In this document: positions 15,781-64,000 of the stretch, in pieces
Layout of the letters: every line of letters starts with the position of its first letter
How positions within the stretch are numbered: position 1 is the stretch's first letter
NCBI RefSeq assembly: GCF_006345805.1
Contig: NC_043023.1
Coordinates: 21,142,001 to 21,206,000, forward strand
Direction: 5' to 3'
DNA length: 64,000 nt
Source: Octopus sinensis
Lineage: Eukaryota
The notes under the pieces: generated by a model
Seen by the model: only the letters and a program-made list of their open reading frames with translations
What the model was told of the DNA's origin: nothing
The model's database searches: none
Translations under genes and position numbers: made by a program

Positions 15781-15957
15781 GTGAAATATGGTGTTGTTTC
15801 GCTTCGTATCCATTTAATTTCTGGATTTCTTTCATTGTCATTTTCCTTCATTTTTATTCTAAAAAAAACTCTTTCAATTCATCTTCATTCGTTGTCATCA
15901 TGTTATTGTTATCGTTTTTTTTTTTTTTCTTTCTCTCTCTCTCTCTCTTTTTCTCAA

Positions 15958-16402
15958 ACCACCACCACCACCACCACCACCGCCACTGCTACCACTACTA
16001 CAACTACGACGGCAACGACAACAACGCACACCCACCTCAACTCCGACGCCGACACCGACCCCGACATCACCGCCACTGCAACAACAACCGCCGCCGCTGC
16101 CGACGTCATCTACGGTTTCCAACACCGCCGCCATCGTCAACCATTGCAACGCCCGTGGCCGCCGCTATAACACCATCGCCACCGCCACCGTCAACACCCA
16201 TACCACCGCCAACGCTCACTCCAACACCGCCGCCGCCACCGCCACCACCACCACGATCACCACCACCAACGCCACGACCACGACGATCAACGCCACCGCC
16301 ATCACTCCCTCCGCCACCACCACCACCAACACTACTACCATCAACAACAACTACAACTACAACAACAACGCCAACACCAACACCAACACCAACACTGCTA
16401 AA
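15958..16402. repeat. GC-rich cryptic trinucleotide repeat (ACC/GCC/ACA)
   Basis: Direct reading; no flanking splice signals found. Confidence 0.8.
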
Positions 16403-16914
16403 AGAAAAGAGACTATCATCTTTTGAACACGTGACAGGAAGTGAGGCGCGCGTTTATGAACATCATCATCATGGCTGCTACGAGTTTGCGTGGGTGGATT
16501 TGGACGAGACGAAAGCGGATGGTAAAGAACGAATCAGGATACAGAAACAACACTTGAACACCATTGGACATTACTATTATTATTCTTATTATCATTGTTA
16601 TTGTTATTATTATTATCATCATTATTATTATTATAATTATTGTTGTTGTTATTATTCTTATTATTGTTGTTGTTGTTATTTTCATCATTACTATCGTTGG
16701 AGACTCGTTTGCATGCCGGACGAAGTGCATAGCGGCGTTTCTTCCGTCTCTTTACGATCTAAGTTCAAATTCCGCCGAGGTCGACTTTACCTTTCATCCT
16801 TTCGGGGTTCGATGAAATAAGTACCAGTTACACACTGGGGTCGATGTAATCGGCTTAGCCCCATCTTCCCCGGAACTTGCTGGCCTTGTGCTAAAATTTG
16901 AAGTCATTATCCTA

Positions 16915-20273: not shown

Positions 20274-20324
20274 AGCTTCTACAGGACAAGAACTGTTTCA
20301 TTCAAAAGAAATCATCAGGAAGCT
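20274..20324 (-). ncRNA. Type I hammerhead ribozyme (left arm of inverted PLE-type repeat)
   Basis: AGCTTC-CTGATGA-T.TTC(TTTT)GAA.T-GAA-ACAG(TTCTTGTC)CTGT-A-GAAGCT: stem I 6 bp, stem III 4 bp, intact core. Confidence 0.8.
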
Positions 20325-20500
20325 AGGTGACAAGAATAGTTTTGGCATTTATACATTTAGGCAGATTTAAAGTGGTGGGGGGGGCTTTTTGGGGTAGGCA
20401 TGGCGCAAACTGTCTTTCTTAGGGGACCCCAAAAAGTCCACCACCACCACCACTTTAAATCTGCCTAAATGTATAAATGCCAAAACTATTCTTGTCACCT

Positions 20501-20550
20501 AGCTTCCTGATGATTTCTTTTGAATGAAACAGTTCTAGTCCGTAGAAGCT
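20501..20550 (+). ncRNA. Type I hammerhead ribozyme (right arm, stem III partly disrupted)
   Basis: AGCTTC-CTGATGA-TTTCTTTTGAAT-GAA-ACAG..CCGT-A-GAAGCT; one mismatch in stem III relative to the left copy. Confidence 0.6.
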
Positions 20551-20669: not shown

Positions 20670-21000
20670 ATAAGTAGTTGAATGAATTATCTTAGTATGG
20701 ATAATCGGTTAACCGATACTGGGTAGCAAATTCACGTCAGAAAAACACGGTTGAAGCTACATGCCAAGGCAAGATCACGTGCTTTCGTGTGGAAATTTGT
20801 GTGTTTTTTTTAATACAAATAATGAAAGAATGGAGTTGAACGACTTATGCTGACATAAGTTCCTTTTTGTTTTCCTGATGAGAAGGCGGCATAATGCACC
20901 CCTTATTCCTTCGAAATTAGGAATATGCAGCCTTCGAAACATATGTCGAGAATAAAGGAATTTTTGTAAATCGTCGTTCAACTCCATTCTTTCATTTATT

Positions 21001-56213: not shown

Positions 56214-56495
56214 GCGTAAGTTAAGTTGGCTTTCGTTACATCATCCTAAAGACAATGCCTAAACCCATTCTACGGAAAAAAAAACTTAACTGAAGTATTC
56301 TTAACATTTTGTACTTTTTGGTCAGAAACATTTTTGAGGTAAAGTAAACAATCAACACGATATAGACCTCTGTTGATGTTTGGGAACTGGTCTGCCATTT
56401 CAGAAAGTATATATATTCAGACCAAATCAGTTACTTGTGCTGAAGCAGATCTTCCCATCGTGATATCAAAACCATCGGGTGTGTCTTTATGGACC

Positions 56496-56551
<56 letters not shown>

Positions 56552-56570
56552 CACGCGCATACGTTCATGA

Positions 56571-56616
<46 letters not shown>

Positions 56617-56994
56617 TTTATATATATATATCTCAGAGGCGATTCAGTGTCACACGGGCTCATCACAGATTTCATACAAGACACATTTCTACTCGAAGAA
56701 TTTCACGTTTTCCCGCTTTATTTCTAGCCCCAAATGGCTTATTTTTTCACATCTAACGCTATGTCTTTCTCCGTTTCTAAGTTAAGGATTACAAGAAAGC
56801 AACCCTGCAAAACACAACTGATTTTTGCGCACAAATGCACAGAATAACAGCAATCAAATTACGACAGCAGAGTGCACAAGCAAACACCAGCGATCTGACT
56901 GTCGCTTGTAATCTTGACAAGAGATGCCAGTTTCTCCTTTACACCTTCCAGGCTCGTTCCTATTAGCCCGAGTTGCTGGATAAATTTTCGTTCC

Positions 56995-59505: not shown

Positions 59506-62500
59506 ATAAATATTAGGGAATAAATCCAAATTTACAGGGAAAAAAATCAGATTTAGGATTAAATCCAATTTTATAGTAAAATATTATAAAATATTATAAA
59601 ATATTATAAAATATTATTTATAATATAGGAGCTAATTGTTGTTATTTATGCTCTAATGAGTTTAAAGAAATTTTATTTTATAAGTATGATAATTTACTTA
59701 ATACTGGTGAAGAGCGCAAAATAAAATGCAGACACAAGTTACTTTACCTATATAATAAGTTTCATGATAAATAGCAATAATAGTTCCCTTTTAGGTTACT
59801 TTAGTTTAGTTTAAATTAGTTTAGATAATATATTTTTGGTTATGTTGTCTAGGCTTTAATTATAGTTAGTCTTTATTGATATTTCTTTGTTTTAATTAGT
59901 TCATTTTTAATGTATATTAATTTAACAGTTTATGGTACGTTAAAACTTTAATAATTTATATTAGATTTTTTTATTTTTTTATTTTTATTTTTATTTTATT
60001 TTATTATGTATTTTTATTTTGCATTTGTTATATGTATTGGAGGATATATTTATATGTTTTGGGTGTTATTTAGTGGTGTTTTTATTGAGTTTTGTATGTA
60101 TGTGTGAATGTTTAAGATCCCTTTGTATTTTGTTTTTTATTTGTATGTTGAATTGACAGATTTTATTTGGGTATTGTCTTTTATAATAAAGTACACACAC
60201 CCATAACAAATATAAGTGCCCACTTCATTCGTTGTACTTGGGATTGCATGTGAGCCTCAGCATATGCACCTAACGGCCACTCCCGCCCCACATGGATAAA
60301 TAAACACATACATCCCCAAAAATGGGAGTAATCCCATTCACACCAATTATATGTATACAATTATACACACTAGAATAATATATAACTAACCCAAATATAC
60401 AGAACATACTAATAATCACCAACTAACCACCATCATAAATGAAACCCACACCCATACAATGACAAAACTCCCCCCCATACCCTATTTACACCCACATAGT
60501 AATCCCAATATATTCATCCATACATGGACGCAAGTGCGTGAAGCACATGCACATAATTAGTACGTACAACCCCTAATACACACTAATATATACGTATCAA
60601 GCTCGACCTCCACAGCGATACGTTTACACCCACTCACACCCAGATGGGTGAATTGCACAACCAGTGAATGCTCACACACACGGGCGCGATTACATTGTTG
60701 CATATATCGAGCCAAAATAGTATGCATATGTACATGTGAGGGGTACACGCAAATGAAGTGAGCGTGTACCCCCTGCATTTATACCCGTGCGTGAATATAC
60801 ACATGGAGACTACCACATAGGTACAAATTGTTTAGAAATGGGAGCCCCATCACTACACTTAATGTATACTCTCACCCATCCGCACGGATGTGTAAGTGTA
60901 TCTCCGGTGTATATGTTGAGGCTTATATGTAGCGTTGTGGAAGGGAACGTCGTTTAAATTGTGAATGAATAGGTGGAGTTGGGAATTGTAACCGGGTGGT
61001 GGACTAGCGTTGCTTGGAATTGTGAATGGATTAGTGTGGTAGTGAGGTATGCATCGAGAATAGTTATGGGTTACTGTAAGTTGTTTGTTAGAGCTGCTAG
61101 GGTGAGCTAAAGCTCATAAATGTATATAATGATTTTCATGGTAGTTTTTATAGAATCCATTCATAATAAATTTTTTTAAGTAGCGTTGGTTTGCTACGTG
61201 ATATAGTTTTTAGTTCCATTTATTATATTTCTCCATTCATATTTTGAATGACGTTTACTTTCTATGGCGCGTATTCTTTTTTTACATAAGTTATTTCTAT
61301 GGTAACGTAATTTTTGTTTGGTTTTTTAACGGCTAAGAATTTAATTTCACTTCATAATTTGTAACTGAATTGTAAGTATGTATTTGATTTATCCTTATGT
61401 CATATTGTTATTTTTGATATTCTGGTTAATTACGATGTATTTAATGTTGTTTTCATAGGAGTGTTTATGTATATGAGATTGGTTGTGAGTTTTTAGTTGT
61501 ATAATTAATTTATTTATCTGTATGAGTGTGGGTGTGTAAATATTGTTGTATATATCGAGTTTAGTGAGTATGTATATGCGTATATGTGAGGGAGTATATG
61601 TATCTGTTGTGTGTGTGTGTTTTGCGTGTGTGTGTGTTTGTGTGTGAATGTGTATTTGGGTTTGTTATTTAGGTTTTGGGATGTATGTGTTAATTTGTCT
61701 GTGTGGGAGGGAGTGGGTTTTGGTGTATTTTGAGGTTTATAAGTTAGTATAGGTTTGTGTATAAGTCTTGGGTCTGTGGTTTACGTGTGTGTATTTGTGT
61801 GTGAATGTTTAGGTTAGGGGGATTGCTATATAAGTTTGTTATAGGGTTTAGCAAAGGGAGATTTTATCGTTATATGCTTTTATGAGTTTTGGTTTATCAT
61901 GGTTTTTTTTAGGTAATTCGTGGTAATTTGTCTATTTTCGATGTTGGTTATTTTTTTACATTGTTTCATTCATAATTTTTGAGTGGTGTTCGTTTTGCCA
62001 CGTGCATAACCGGGTGGTGGACTAGCGTTGCTTGGAATGTGAATGGAATAGTGTAGTAGTGAGGTAGGCATAGAGAATGGGATTGGGTTACTGCAAGTTG
62101 TTTGTTAGAGCTGCTAAGCTGAGTTAAAGCTCATAAATGTATTTAATGATTTTTGTGGGTGTGTAAGTATTGTTGTATATGTCGAGTTTAGTGAGTATGT
62201 ATATGCGTATATGTGAGGGAGTATATGTATCTGTTGTGTGTGCGTGTTTTGCGTGTGTGTGTGTGTTTGTGTGTGAATGTGTATATGGGTTTGTTATTTA
62301 GGTTTTGGGATGTATGTGTTAATTTGTCTGTGTGGGGAGGGAGTGGGTTTTGGTGTATATTGAGGTTTATAAGTTAGTATAGGTATGTGTATAAGTCGTG
62401 GGTCTGTGGTTTACGTGTGTGTATTTGTGTGTGAATGTTTAGGTTAGGGGGATTACTATATAGGTTTGTTTTAGAATTTAGCAAAGGGAGATTTTATCGT

Positions 62501-62825
62501 TATATGTTTTTAAGAGTTTTGTTTTATCATGGTTTTTTTTAGGGAATTCGTGGTAATTTGTCTATATTTTCGATATGGATTATATATAGGTTATATATGG
62601 ATTATATACTTATATTTTTTCATTTATACTTTAATTATTTAAAATTATTATTTTTATATTTTAAAATTTTGATTTTTTAGATTGGAAGTCCACCTGAAGA
62701 TTGTCGATCAAGACAAGAAACGATTGTAGTGGCGGTTTTTTTGACTATTTATTAAAATTTTATGTATTGATTAAGTCTTTCCTTGTTTGCTTTGCAAAAT
62801 AGTGGTTTTGTCTCTAATAATATTT
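59505..62825. mobile_element. Decayed Penelope-like composite element with strong strand skew, internal duplication and terminal HHR
   Basis: Ends are shared with 27278-27565. 60990-61135 repeats at 62009-62155 and 61530-61960 repeats at 62157-62575. GT/CA skew switches near 60180 and 60830. HHR at 62690. Confidence 0.55.
62690..62732 (+). ncRNA. Minimal type I hammerhead ribozyme in PLE-type terminal repeat
   Basis: CCAC-CTGAAGA-TTGTC(GATCAA)GACAA-GAA-ACGATTGT-A-GTGG; near-palindromic stem III; predicted cut after 62728. Confidence 0.85.
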
Positions 62826-62857
<32 letters not shown>

Positions 62858-63088
62858 TATAATTAATCAATATAGGGTGGCAAAAAAAATTTTGTAGAAT
62901 TCCTTTTGCCACCAGCGGCCTAGTGGGAAAAAATTAAATAGTCACAGACCATTTTTAAGTTCAACATCAACAATCAAGGAACGGCCATAATAGGCCATTC
63001 ACCCACTAGAAATAACAGCCAAAGCTTCAACCGCAAATAAAGATTAATTCCGTAAACAGGAGAAAATTTAAAAAACATTTACCCTGTA

Positions 63089-63195
63089 ATTTCTTGTACG
63101 ATGTACCGTTTCATCTGCTGTTTAATGGTAAACTAACCTGATTAAATTAAATCAAGCCAATCTTCCATAGGCCCTCAGATTCTTCAGCAAGAAAT
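63089..63195 (-). ncRNA. Type I hammerhead ribozyme in 490-bp repeat, unit 1
   Basis: Minus strand: ATTTCTTG-CTGAAGA-ATCTG(~58-nt insert)CAGAT-GAA-ACGG(TACA)TCGT-A-CAAGAAAT. Stem I 8 bp, stem II 5 bp, stem III 4 bp, intact core; predicted cut between 63097 and 63096. Confidence 0.9.
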
Positions 63196-63579
63196 AGCCA
63201 AGTCGGAACAGATATTTTCACGAGGCATTTCCGACCCTGCCAAGGCAATATCTGACCTAAAATTTTCAAATCGTCGCACTCGCGCCAAATTTATCGGCAG
63301 CAAATAAATATAAGCCGCCGATTCCATTACGGAATTAACCAGAAAATCCATAATTAATCAATATAGGGTGGCAAAAAAAATTTTGTAGAATTCCTTTTGC
63401 CACCAGCGGCCTAGTGGGAAAAAATTAAATAGTCACAGACCATTTTTAAGTTCAACATCAACAATCAAGGAACGGCCATAATAGGCCATTCACCCACTAG
63501 AAATAACAGCCAAAGCTTCAACCGCAAATAAAGATTAATTCCGTAAACAGGAGAAAATTTAAAAAACATTTACCCTGTA

Positions 63580-63686
63580 ATTTCTTGTACGATGTACCGT
63601 TTCATCTGCTGTTTAATGGTAAACTAACCTGATTAAATTAAATCAAGCCAATCTTCCATAGGCCCTCAGATTCTTCAGCAAGAAAT
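63580..63686 (-). ncRNA. Type I hammerhead ribozyme in 490-bp repeat, unit 2
   Basis: Same sequence as the unit-1 HHR, shifted by 491 nt; predicted cut between 63588 and 63587. Confidence 0.9.
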
Positions 63687-64000
63687 AGCCAAGTCGGAAC
63701 AGATATTTTCACGAGGCATTTCCGACCCTGCCAAGGCAATATCTGACCTAAAATTTTCAAATCGTCGCACTCGCGCCAAATTTATCGGCAGCAAATAAAT
63801 ATAAGCCGCCGATTCCATTACGGAATTAACAGAAAATCCATAATTAATCAATATAGGGTGGCAAAAAAAATTTTGTAGAATTCCTTTTGCCACCAGCGAC
63901 CTAGTGGGAAAAAATTAAATAGTCACAGACCATTTTTAAGTTCAACATCAACAATCAAGGAACGGCCATAATAGGCCATTCACCCACTAGAAATAACAGC

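What the first reader, a model, noticed from the sequence alone, without database searches (positions are those of the whole stretch)
62860..64000. Tandem ~490-bp array with one intact hammerhead ribozyme per unit: candidate octopus retrozyme / self-processing circular RNA system
Seen: near-identical head-to-tail units starting at 62860, 63351 and 63841. On the minus strand each complete unit folds into a full type I HHR (8-bp stem I ATTTCTTG/CAAGAAAT, core CTGAAGA...GAAA, 5-bp stem II with a ~58-nt insert, stem III ACGG/TCGT, GUA cut site). The two cut sites are 491 nt apart. The unit is also richly self-complementary (TTAATTCCGTAA 63044/63327, GGTGGCAAAA/TTTTGCCACC, CTAGTGGG/CCCACTAG) and has no meaningful ORF. 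Established: HHR-bearing tandem repeats (newt satellite 2, Schistosoma Sm-alpha, cricket pDo500, metazoan non-LTR retrozymes) are transcribed as multimers, self-cleave to unit monomers and can circularise. Inference: this is an equivalent, young non-autonomous retroelement in a cephalopod-like genome, possibly mobilised by PLE reverse transcriptases, since it starts in an (AT)n tract beside a PLE-type end. I do not know of a description of this family.
Basis: partly seen in the sequence, partly recalled or inferred. Interest (0 to 1): 0.92.

Follow-up and report, generated by a model that had tools for sequence, protein, structure and literature searches.

The report
Hammerhead-ribozyme tandem repeat in octopus
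At the end of this Octopus sinensis window lies a head-to-tail array of 491-bp non-coding units, each with a complete self-cleaving hammerhead ribozyme motif on the minus strand; it fits the known animal "non-LTR retrozyme" class, so it is a new example of a known kind.

Summary
Tandem Repeats Finder gives period 491, 2.3 copies and 99% identity at 62859-64000, and the array runs off the window end. Each full unit carries a type I hammerhead (HHR) on the minus strand, at 63089-63195 and 63580-63686. The core is intact, helix I has 8 bp, and helix II has 5 bp plus a 58-nt hairpin extension. Helix III has 4 bp, and the GUA cut sites lie 491 nt apart.

A descriptor of this quality occurs in 0 of 200 shuffles of the window. 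Scanned alone, the motif's best match among 4227 Rfam families is Hammerhead_1, but at only 16.1 bits against a cut-off of 34. The 10.1-11.1 pair is A-U, not the usual G-C.

The 491-nt minus-strand circle is predicted to be strongly self-paired (z = -6.2), with 21 G-U pairs that the plus strand cannot form. The unit has 37.5% GC and no real ORF, and its edge abuts a (TA)18 tract.

The window is from Octopus sinensis (GCA_006345805.1). All testable features of metazoan non-LTR retrozymes are met. Cleavage, circles, copy number and mobility remain untested, and the neighbouring "PLE-type end" is only weakly supported.

Verdict: a new member of a known kind, of moderate to low interest.

The parts
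62826..62861 (.). (TA)18 microsatellite that forms the left junction of the array
   Evidence: TRF period 2, 18 copies. The unit sequence starts at 62859/62860 within the TA-like word ATAATTAAT.
62860..63350 (-). Unit 1 of the array (491 bp)
63351..63840 (-). Unit 2 (490 bp; one C fewer than unit 1 near its end)
   Evidence: 99.8% identity.
63841..64000 (-). Unit 3, first 160 bp only, cut by the end of the window (one G>A substitution)
63089..63195 (-). Hammerhead ribozyme motif, copy 1. In + coordinates: helix I 5' strand 63195-63188, CUGAAGA 63187-63181, helix II 63180-63113, GAAA 63112-63109, helix III 63108-63099, U16.1 A17 63098-63097, helix I 3' strand 63096-63089.
   Evidence: Descriptor scan, folds, Rfam Hammerhead_1 at 16.1 bits as the top family.
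63580..63686 (-). Hammerhead ribozyme motif, copy 2, identical to copy 1
63096..63097 (-). Predicted self-cleavage site 1 (after A17 of GUA, before C1.1)
   Evidence: Read from the motif.
63587..63588 (-). Predicted self-cleavage site 2, 491 nt from site 1
62690..62732 (+). Minimal HHR-like motif on the opposite strand, 108 bp before the (TA)n: CCAC|CUGAAGA|UUGUC-GAUCAA-GACAA|GAAA|C-GAUU-G|UA|GUGG. Its link to the array is uncertain.
   Evidence: Relaxed descriptor only, with a chance expectation of 0.045 per window. No Rfam match. Fold no better than shuffles.

Best explanation
This is a genomic array of a non-autonomous, non-coding retroelement of the metazoan non-LTR retrozyme kind, in Octopus sinensis.

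Proposed working (only the anatomy is shown; steps 1-4 are inferred from the family):
1. The minus strand is transcribed as a multimer. RNA polymerase II or read-through is the likely source, because the minus strand has T6-T8 runs that would stop polymerase III.
2. In each unit the type I hammerhead folds. Helix I pairs AUUUCUUG with the CAAGAAAU just past the cut, helix II is a long imperfect hairpin, and helix III has 4 bp. [quoted passage not shown]
3. The monomer folds into a compact branched structure, and a host RtcB-type tRNA ligase closes it into a circle.
4. A reverse transcriptase supplied in trans, most plausibly from a Penelope-like element whose GIY-YIG nuclease prefers AT-rich or (TA)n DNA, copies the circle or multimer more than once round at a nicked (TA)n tract. 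This gives the near-identical head-to-tail copies seen here.
For: Shown here:
- Tandem array with period 491 and 99% identity.
- A complete HHR core with three helices per unit, absent from 200 shuffles.
- The catalytic fold lies within 0.5 kcal/mol of the MFE.
- Hammerhead_1 is the best of 4227 Rfam families when the motif is scanned alone.
- The circular monomer MFE is -153.6 kcal/mol on the minus strand (shuffles -113.5 +/- 6.5, z = -6.2) against -104.4 on the plus strand.
- 21 of 157 predicted pairs are G-U and cannot form in the plus RNA. They include 5 of the 14 pairs of the helix II hairpin, read by eye from the fold.
- GC is 37.5%. No ORF exceeds 72 aa, and that ORF has no homologue.
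- The edge of the array that is the 3' end in HHR polarity abuts (TA)18.
- Three other HHR or HHR-like motifs in the window each have a (TA)>=8 tract 35-108 bp past their 3' end, although only about 10% of the window lies within 100 bp of such a tract.

From the literature:
- Definition and life cycle of non-LTR retrozymes, including a mussel, and RtcB circularisation: PMC7229834, PMC7761336.
- Retrozymes related to PLE pseudo-LTRs: bioRxiv 10.64898/2026.07.22.740005.
- (TA)n or AT-rich target preference of PLEs: PMC8557442, PMC11167929.
- 31 Penelope-like families are listed in the recently-active TE table for the related species O. vulgaris: PMC13282606.
Against: - The Rfam score (16.1 bits) is far below the gathering score (34), and the motif is invisible in ordinary scans.
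- The 10.1-11.1 pair is A-U. G-C is the most conserved pair of the consensus after A15.1-U16.1 (PMC3088659).
- The usual loop 1-loop 2 contact cannot be recognised, because helix II continues as a 68-nt arm.
- Only one locus and 2.3 units are visible, and the right end is outside the window.
- There is no expression data.
- No relatives were found, so there is no covariation support.
- No PLE ORF was found in the window.
- Part of the strand asymmetry in folding energy comes from the G+U-rich composition of the minus strand; the z-scores are -6.2 and -5.1.
Confidence: 0.72

Rival explanations
1. It is a hammerhead-bearing satellite or dead array. The units descend from a ribozyme element, but this HHR variant no longer cleaves efficiently, or the locus is silent. 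On this reading the array is just tandem DNA kept uniform by unequal crossing-over.
For: A10.1-U11.1, a 58-nt helix II insert and a sub-threshold Rfam score. No recognisable loop-loop contact. No expression evidence available. The record range places the window near one end of the 21.3-Mb record, where satellites are common.
Against: The core is perfect in both copies and all three helices are intact. The helix II extension is a well-formed, minus-strand-specific hairpin rich in G-U pairs, which suggests constraint at RNA level rather than decay. Natural HHRs with non-G-C 10.1-11.1 pairs do cleave (U-U cases in PMC3088659 and PMC7229834). The units are 99.8% identical, so the array is young or was recently homogenised.
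Confidence: 0.15
2. It is the remains of a Penelope-like element insertion: pseudo-LTR-only tandem copies left after loss of the ORF. It would not be an element with its own circular-RNA cycle.
For: PLEs insert as tandems and carry HHRs in their pseudo-LTRs (PMC4209133, PMC8557442). A 2026 preprint derives retrozymes from pseudo-LTRs. The array sits at (TA)n, with a minimal HHR-like motif 130 bp away.
Against: No RT or GIY-YIG ORF was found in the units or elsewhere in the window. The array's HHR has a stable 4-bp helix III, unlike the minimal PLE type with 0-1 bp and a palindromic loop (PMC4209133). The unit shows no similarity to the flanking sequence.
Confidence: 0.08
3. It is an assembly artefact: a single copy, or a different number of copies, wrongly expanded by the assembler.
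For: Near-identical tandem copies are error-prone in long-read assemblies. The window contains an N gap at 43256-43355.
Against: The copies differ by an indel and a substitution. The left junction with unique flank is clean. A single copy would still carry the HHR.
Confidence: 0.04
4. The hammerhead-like words occur by chance in an ordinary repeat.
For: The simple word pattern CTGANGA...GAAA...TH is common: 28 matches against about 12 expected.
Against: With the helices required, 0 of 200 shuffles give a hit. Hammerhead_1 is the top Rfam family over its full model length. Two further motifs of the same architecture in the window score 26.0 and 22.7 bits.
Confidence: 0.01

Closest known systems
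Metazoan non-LTR retrozymes, e.g. the ~350-bp Mytilus galloprovincialis and 220-240-bp Acropora millepora repeats (Cervera & de la Pena 2020, PMC7229834)
   Same: One type I HHR per unit. Head-to-tail arrays from dimers upward. GC below 45%. No LTR, PBS, PPT or ORF. Predicted highly self-paired monomer. Helix III stable enough for a single motif, as in invertebrate retrozymes. Like the mussel HHRs, it lacks the archetypal loop 1-loop 2 nucleotides.
   Different: The unit is 491 bp, above the reported 150-450 bp (circles 170-400 nt). Helix II is a 68-nt arm instead of 4 bp plus a small loop. The 10.1-11.1 pair is A-U. The host is a cephalopod, for which I found no report. Expression as circles is not shown here.
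Classical HHR satellites: newt satellite 2, Schistosoma Sm-alpha, Dolichopoda pDo500 (named in the finding; pDo500 in PMC2837043)
   Same: [quoted passage not shown]
   Different: The newt and Schistosoma motifs have a 1-2-bp helix III with a palindromic loop and work as dimers (PMC4209133, PMC7229834). This one has A-U, C-G, G-C and G-U pairs plus a UACA loop. There is no sequence similarity to them.
Minimal hammerheads in pseudo-LTRs of Penelope-like elements (Cervera & de la Pena 2014, PMC4209133)
   Same: Type I topology, association with tandem insertions, and a link to AT-rich or (TA)n targets. The motif at 62690-62732 resembles this minimal type (4-bp helix I, 1-bp helix III).
   Different: PLE motifs sit next to an RT-GIY-YIG ORF. 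They have a 7-8-bp helix II with an extra base after A9, a conserved G10.1-C11.1 pair and a palindromic 15.2-16.2 region and loop 3. The array HHR and the 62690 motif lack these features, and no PLE ORF is nearby.
Rfam RF00163 Hammerhead_1
   Same: Full-length alignment to all 45 model positions, with core and helices in register.
   Different: 16.1 bits against a gathering score of 34. There is a 58-nt insert where the model has 4 nt, and 6 nt where it has 2 in loop III.

Membership tests
Hammerhead ribozyme, type I | Conserved core: C3 U4 G5 A6 N7 G8 A9, G12 A13 A14, an A15.1-U16.1 pair, and H17 at the cut | tested here: met
   CUGAAGA ... GAAA ... UA in both copies. Aligned in register by Rfam.
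Hammerhead ribozyme, type I | Three helices around the core, with helices II and III closed by loops and helix I open | tested here: met
   Helix I 8 bp, helix II 5 bp plus extension, helix III 4 bp including A15.1-U16.1. The enforced three-helix fold is -31.0 against an MFE of -31.5 kcal/mol.
Hammerhead ribozyme, type I | G10.1-C11.1 pair at the base of helix II (highly conserved, but with natural exceptions, so not strictly defining) | tested here: not met
   A10.1-U11.1. PMC3088659 and PMC7229834 report active or natural motifs with U-U at this position.
Hammerhead ribozyme, type I | Rfam RF00163 curated gathering score of 34 bits (an operational cut-off) | tested here: not met
   16.1 bits, E 0.17 on 126 nt, best of 4227 families. 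Not reported in larger scans.
Hammerhead ribozyme, type I | Tertiary contact between helices I and II | tested here: inconclusive
   Helix II has an internal loop after 5 bp and helix I one after 8 bp. No canonical loop nucleotides are recognisable.
Hammerhead ribozyme, type I | Site-specific self-cleavage | not testable with these tools
   Needs in vitro transcription of a two-unit clone.
Metazoan non-LTR retrozyme | A type I HHR in each unit of a short head-to-tail tandem repeat (reported 150-450 bp) | tested here: met
   Period 491, 2.3 visible copies, one HHR per full unit. The unit is about 40 bp above the reported size range (PMC7229834).
Metazoan non-LTR retrozyme | Low GC content (<45-50%) | tested here: met
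   37.5%.
Metazoan non-LTR retrozyme | No LTRs and no coding capacity (PBS and PPT motifs were not searched for separately) | tested here: met
   Longest ORF is 72 aa, with no homologue among 5.8 billion proteins. No terminal repeats other than the units themselves.
Metazoan non-LTR retrozyme | Monomer predicted to be a stable, highly self-paired circle | tested here: met
   Circular MFE -153.6 kcal/mol, 64% of bases paired, z = -6.2.
Metazoan non-LTR retrozyme | Expressed as linear and circular monomer RNA | not testable with these tools
   No octopus RNA data reachable. Unit ORFs are absent from the assembly and protein collections.
Metazoan non-LTR retrozyme | Many dispersed arrays in the genome, i.e. 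evidence of mobility, with target-site duplications where present | not testable with these tools
   There is only one locus in the window. The right end lies beyond the window and could not be fetched. Pattern scans of the metagenome, viral and prokaryote collections gave only chance hits.
Metazoan non-LTR retrozyme | Co-occurrence with Penelope-like elements in the same genome | not tested
   No PLE ORF was found in the window. The literature lists 31 Penelope-like families in the recently-active TE table for the related O. vulgaris (PMC13282606).
Penelope-like element (pseudo-LTR) | An RT plus GIY-YIG ORF between the repeats | tested here: not met
   No such ORF in or beside the array. The only RT domains in the window (8136-9284 and 4322-4780, both minus strand) hit RVT_1, and the first looks LINE-type, with a restriction-like nuclease motif downstream read by eye.
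Penelope-like element (pseudo-LTR) | Minimal HHR: helix III of 0-1 bp with a palindromic loop, helix II of 7-8 bp with an extra base after A9, and G10.1-C11.1 | tested here: not met
   The array HHR has a 4-bp helix III and A10.1-U11.1. The 62690 motif has a 1-bp helix III, but a non-palindromic GAUU loop and U10.1-A11.1, and no Rfam match.

The most novel reading that the evidence does not exclude
Octopus genomes may hold a so far unannotated population of type I hammerheads with a distinctive build: a 54-68-nt helix II arm. Three sequence-unrelated families occur in this one 64-kb window. All are missed by standard Rfam scans, and all have their 3' side anchored at (TA)n tracts. If these are active, cephalopods would have abundant PLE-mobilised ribozyme elements and long, highly double-stranded circular RNAs. 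The (TA)n junctions would be direct sequence evidence for which enzyme mobilises animal retrozymes.
Probability: 0.3. Interest if true: 0.5.

Novelty: new member of a known kind. Interest (0 to 1): 0.35.

Why it matters
Animal retrozymes are a recently recognised source of abundant small circular RNAs, and the enzyme that mobilises them is still inferred, not shown. A cephalopod example widens the host range. It also shows that hammerheads with long helix II arms escape routine Rfam annotation. The array's junction with (TA)n, together with three more HHR or HHR-like motifs that have (TA)n just 3' of them, fits the AT-rich or (TA)n target preference reported for Penelope-like nucleases. That gives a cheap genome-wide test of the PLE-mobilisation idea. 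None of this changes the picture of the class, so the gain is incremental.

Tried and rejected
1. Rfam on the whole window at gathering score, and on 1.6 kb and 13 kb at E<=10, showed no hammerhead. This was a filter and search-space effect. Scans of about 100 nt recover Hammerhead_1 for three of the four motifs but not for 62690.

2. Search for relatives:
- The pattern CTGANGAATCTG-N45-72-CAGATGAAAC in the metagenome, viral and prokaryote genome collections gave 46, 2 and 22 loci. None resembles the unit (blastn E<=0.01 found nothing), so they are chance matches.
- Exact look-ups of the four unit ORFs (72, 55, 40 and 34 aa) found nothing on record.
- A homology search with the 72-aa ORF found no candidate.

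3. Extending past the window end through ORFs at 60557-60778 and 56489-56785 failed, because neither is on record. The array's length and right junction therefore stay unknown.

4. Search for a PLE partner in the window. Pfam on 20 ORFs or fragments found only RVT_1, at 8133-9095 and at 4322-4780, both on the minus strand. The first looks LINE-like. There was no GIY-YIG hit.

5. No second ribozyme on the plus strand. Nothing appeared in Rfam at E<=10.

6. No tRNA genes. A pol III origin for minus-strand multimers is unlikely, because the A6-A8 runs on the plus strand give T6-T8 runs in the minus strand.

7. The folding-energy asymmetry between strands is not proof on its own, because the minus strand is G+U-rich. 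I rely instead on z-scores and the G-U pair count.

Full report
**Where the window comes from**

A 306-aa ORF of the window (15900-16820) is encoded, residue for residue, on CM016885.1 of assembly GCA_006345805.1. It lies about 170 kb from one end of that 21.33-Mb record. PMC10700109 names the assembly as the chromosome-scale Octopus sinensis genome.

**The observation**

- Tandem Repeats Finder reports one array at 62859-64000 with period 491, 2.3 copies and 99% matches.
- Aligned, the units 62860-63350, 63351-63840 and 63841-64000 differ by one 1-bp indel and one substitution.
- The array runs off the window. blastn finds no other copy in the 64 kb.
- Its left edge touches a (TA)18 tract at 62826-62861.

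**The ribozyme motif**

On the minus strand each full unit reads AUUUCUUG | CUGAAGA | AUCUG-[58 nt]-CAGAU | GAAA | CGG-UACA-UCG | UA^ | CAAGAAAU.

- This is a complete type I hammerhead. All core nucleotides are present. Helix I (8 bp) is open. Helix II (5 bp) continues as a long imperfect hairpin. Helix III is A-U, C-G, G-C, G-U with a UACA loop, and the cut follows GUA.
- The two cut sites (63096|63097 and 63587|63588) are 491 nt apart.
- I scanned both strands with a descriptor that requires the core and the three helices. At helix lengths >=5/4/2, or at the observed lengths, none of 200 dinucleotide shuffles of the window gave a hit. A relaxed form (>=4/3/1) gave 0.045 hits per shuffled window.
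- The 107-nt motif folds at -31.5 kcal/mol (shuffles -17.9 +/- 3.1, z = -4.4) with helices I and II and the hairpin in the MFE. Enforcing helix III as well costs 0.5 kcal/mol.

**Why Rfam was silent at first**

- Hammerhead models did not appear at gathering score on the window, nor at E<=10 on 1.6 kb.
- Scanning 126 nt alone, where the filters are laxer, makes Hammerhead_1 (RF00163) the best of 4227 families. The full model 1-45 aligns in exactly my register. The score is 16.1 bits (E 0.17; gathering score 34), with the 58 nt placed as an insert in loop II.
- So the model recognises the motif but penalises the insert and the non-consensus base of helix II.
- That base pair, 10.1-11.1, is A-U. 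The G-C pair is the most conserved of the consensus after A15.1-U16.1, although natural exceptions exist (PMC3088659; HHR_Amex2 in PMC7229834).
- These two points are the main sequence-level reasons to doubt full activity.

**The rest of the unit**

- GC is 37.5%.
- The longest ORF is 72 aa and has no homologue.
- Cut at the ribozyme sites and closed into a circle, the minus-strand RNA has a predicted MFE of -153.6 kcal/mol with 64% of bases paired (shuffles -113.5 +/- 6.5, z = -6.2). The plus strand gives -104.4 (z = -5.1).
- The minus-strand fold contains 21 G-U pairs among 157, none of which can form in the plus RNA. By my count from the fold, 5 of the 14 pairs of the helix II hairpin are G-U.
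- Part of the asymmetry is compositional, because the minus strand is G+U-rich. Even so, a helix II arm that exists only in the ribozyme polarity argues for constraint on that RNA.

**Surroundings**

The same descriptor found three more motifs in the window.

- 20864-20958 (+): CUGAUGA, G10.1-C11.1, helix III C-AUAU-G, cut at GUC, helix II region 54 nt. Hammerhead_1 scores 26.0 bits, E 8.5e-5, when it is scanned alone. A perfect 24-nt inverted repeat closes it.
- 31554-31641 (+): G-C, C-AAUU-G, cut at GUA, helix II region 57 nt. Hammerhead_1 scores 22.7 bits. It lies inside a 94-nt-arm foldback with its own antisense copy.

The first two share nothing with the array HHR except the core and the build. 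Their helices differ in sequence but still pair. A long helix II arm therefore recurs in this genome in unrelated families.

All three plus-strand motifs have a (TA)>=8 tract 35-108 bp beyond their 3' end. The array's 3' edge in ribozyme polarity touches one directly. Only about 10% of the window lies within 100 bp of such a tract.

PMC8557442 reports (TA)n as a preferred target of Naiad elements and a microsatellite bias attributed to the nuclease linker in Neptune elements. PMC11167929 shows AT-rich cleavage by a purified Poseidon protein. The junction evidence therefore fits mobilisation by a Penelope-like enzyme, which is the partner proposed for animal retrozymes (PMC7229834, PMC7761336, bioRxiv 10.64898/2026.07.22.740005). 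PMC13282606 lists 31 Penelope-like families in its recently-active TE table for O. vulgaris, a related species.

Against a local link:
- The 62690 motif has U10.1-A11.1 and a non-palindromic loop 3. It folds no better than shuffles and gets no Rfam match at all.
- The unit has no similarity to its flank.
- The window holds no RT-GIY-YIG ORF. The clearer of its two RVT_1 fragments looks LINE-type.

**What it is**

Every sequence-level feature that PMC7229834 uses to define metazoan non-LTR retrozymes is met:
- a type I HHR in each unit of a short tandem repeat;
- low GC;
- no LTRs and no coding capacity (PBS and PPT motifs were not searched for separately);
- a highly self-paired monomer.

The unit is a little larger than reported (491 against 150-450 bp). 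The features that need other data are untested: expression as circles, multiple loci, target-site duplications and an autonomous partner in the same genome. I therefore file it as a new member of a known kind. It has two structural peculiarities: the helix II arm and A10.1-U11.1.

**How it most likely works**

All of the following is inferred from the family. Only the anatomy is shown here.
1. The minus strand is transcribed as a multimer. Polymerase III is unlikely, because the strand has T6-T8 runs.
2. Each hammerhead cleaves after GUA and releases 491-nt monomers.
3. An RtcB-type ligase circularises the monomers.
4. A PLE-type enzyme reverse-transcribes the circle or multimer at a nicked (TA)n tract, which gives near-identical tandem copies.

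**Rivals**

- An inactive or silent HHR satellite: 0.15.
- ORF-less pseudo-LTR remains of a PLE insertion: 0.08.
- An assembly artefact: 0.04.
- Chance: 0.01.

**What could not be done**

- I found no relatives. Pattern scans of the three DNA collections gave only chance matches.
- The unit's ORFs are not on record.
- The sequence beyond the window could not be fetched.
- There is therefore no covariation test within the family, no copy number and no right junction.
- Searches of the held literature found no report of hammerheads or retrozymes in cephalopods. That library omits most subscription journals.

**Verdict**

The interpretation as a retrozyme-type element in an octopus is the best reading (0.72), but it rests on anatomy alone. 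The class is known, so interest is moderate to low (0.35).

Noticed in passing
window 20821-20996 (HHR 20864-20958, + strand): A second, unrelated type I hammerhead: CUGAUGA, G10.1-C11.1, helix III C-AUAU-G, cut at GUC, 54-nt helix II region. A perfect 24-nt inverted repeat closes it, and it lies between two (TA)n tracts. Rfam Hammerhead_1 scores 26.0 bits, E 8.5e-5, when scanned alone, below the gathering score of 34. It looks like a single-unit ribozyme element.
   Followed up: partly
window 31414-31666 (HHR 31554-31641, + strand): A third hammerhead family: G-C, helix III C-AAUU-G, cut at GUA, 57-nt helix II region. Hammerhead_1 scores 22.7 bits. It sits inside a foldback whose other arm is its own antisense copy (94-nt arms, 85% complementary), flanked by (TA)n on both sides. 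The inverted arrangement recalls the inverted truncated copies described for PLE insertions (PMC8557442).
   Followed up: partly
window 32687-32811: A near-perfect foldback (61-nt arms, 93%) between (TA)n tracts. It contains CUGAUGA...GAAAC words but has a poor helix II, so it is not a convincing hammerhead. Rfam scores it as miRNA-like (MIR1120, 58 bits, below the gathering score of 86), which probably only reflects the hairpin.
   Followed up: partly
window 20284-20541: Another foldback element (101-nt arms, 97% complementary) right next to a (TA)n tract. Short hairpin-forming insertions in (TA)n seem to be a recurring theme of this region.
   Followed up: no
window 60985-62570: Just upstream of the array, a G/T-rich, C-poor repeat is present in two tandem copies at 88-96% identity. 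The first copy carries an extra segment of about 390 bp. Its nature is unknown, and it has no similarity to the array unit.
   Followed up: no
window ~31765-31840: A tRNA-like SINE head, read by eye: A box TGGCCCAGTGG and a B-box-like GGTTTCGATTCCC. It is inserted between TA-rich tracts. Neither ARAGORN nor Rfam calls it.
   Followed up: no
window 7181-9284 (- strand): A degraded LINE-type reverse transcriptase (Pfam RVT_1, E 2.7e-22). A restriction-like endonuclease motif, read by eye, follows it downstream. Long AT-rich low-complexity runs interrupt it. It is not a Penelope-like element.
   Followed up: partly
window 43256-43355: A run of 100 N, which is an assembly gap.
   Followed up: no
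whole window: 43 perfect (TA)>=8 tracts, grouped in 28 zones. All four HHR or HHR-like elements have such a tract at or within 108 bp of their 3' side, while only about 10% of the window lies within 100 bp of one.
   Followed up: partly
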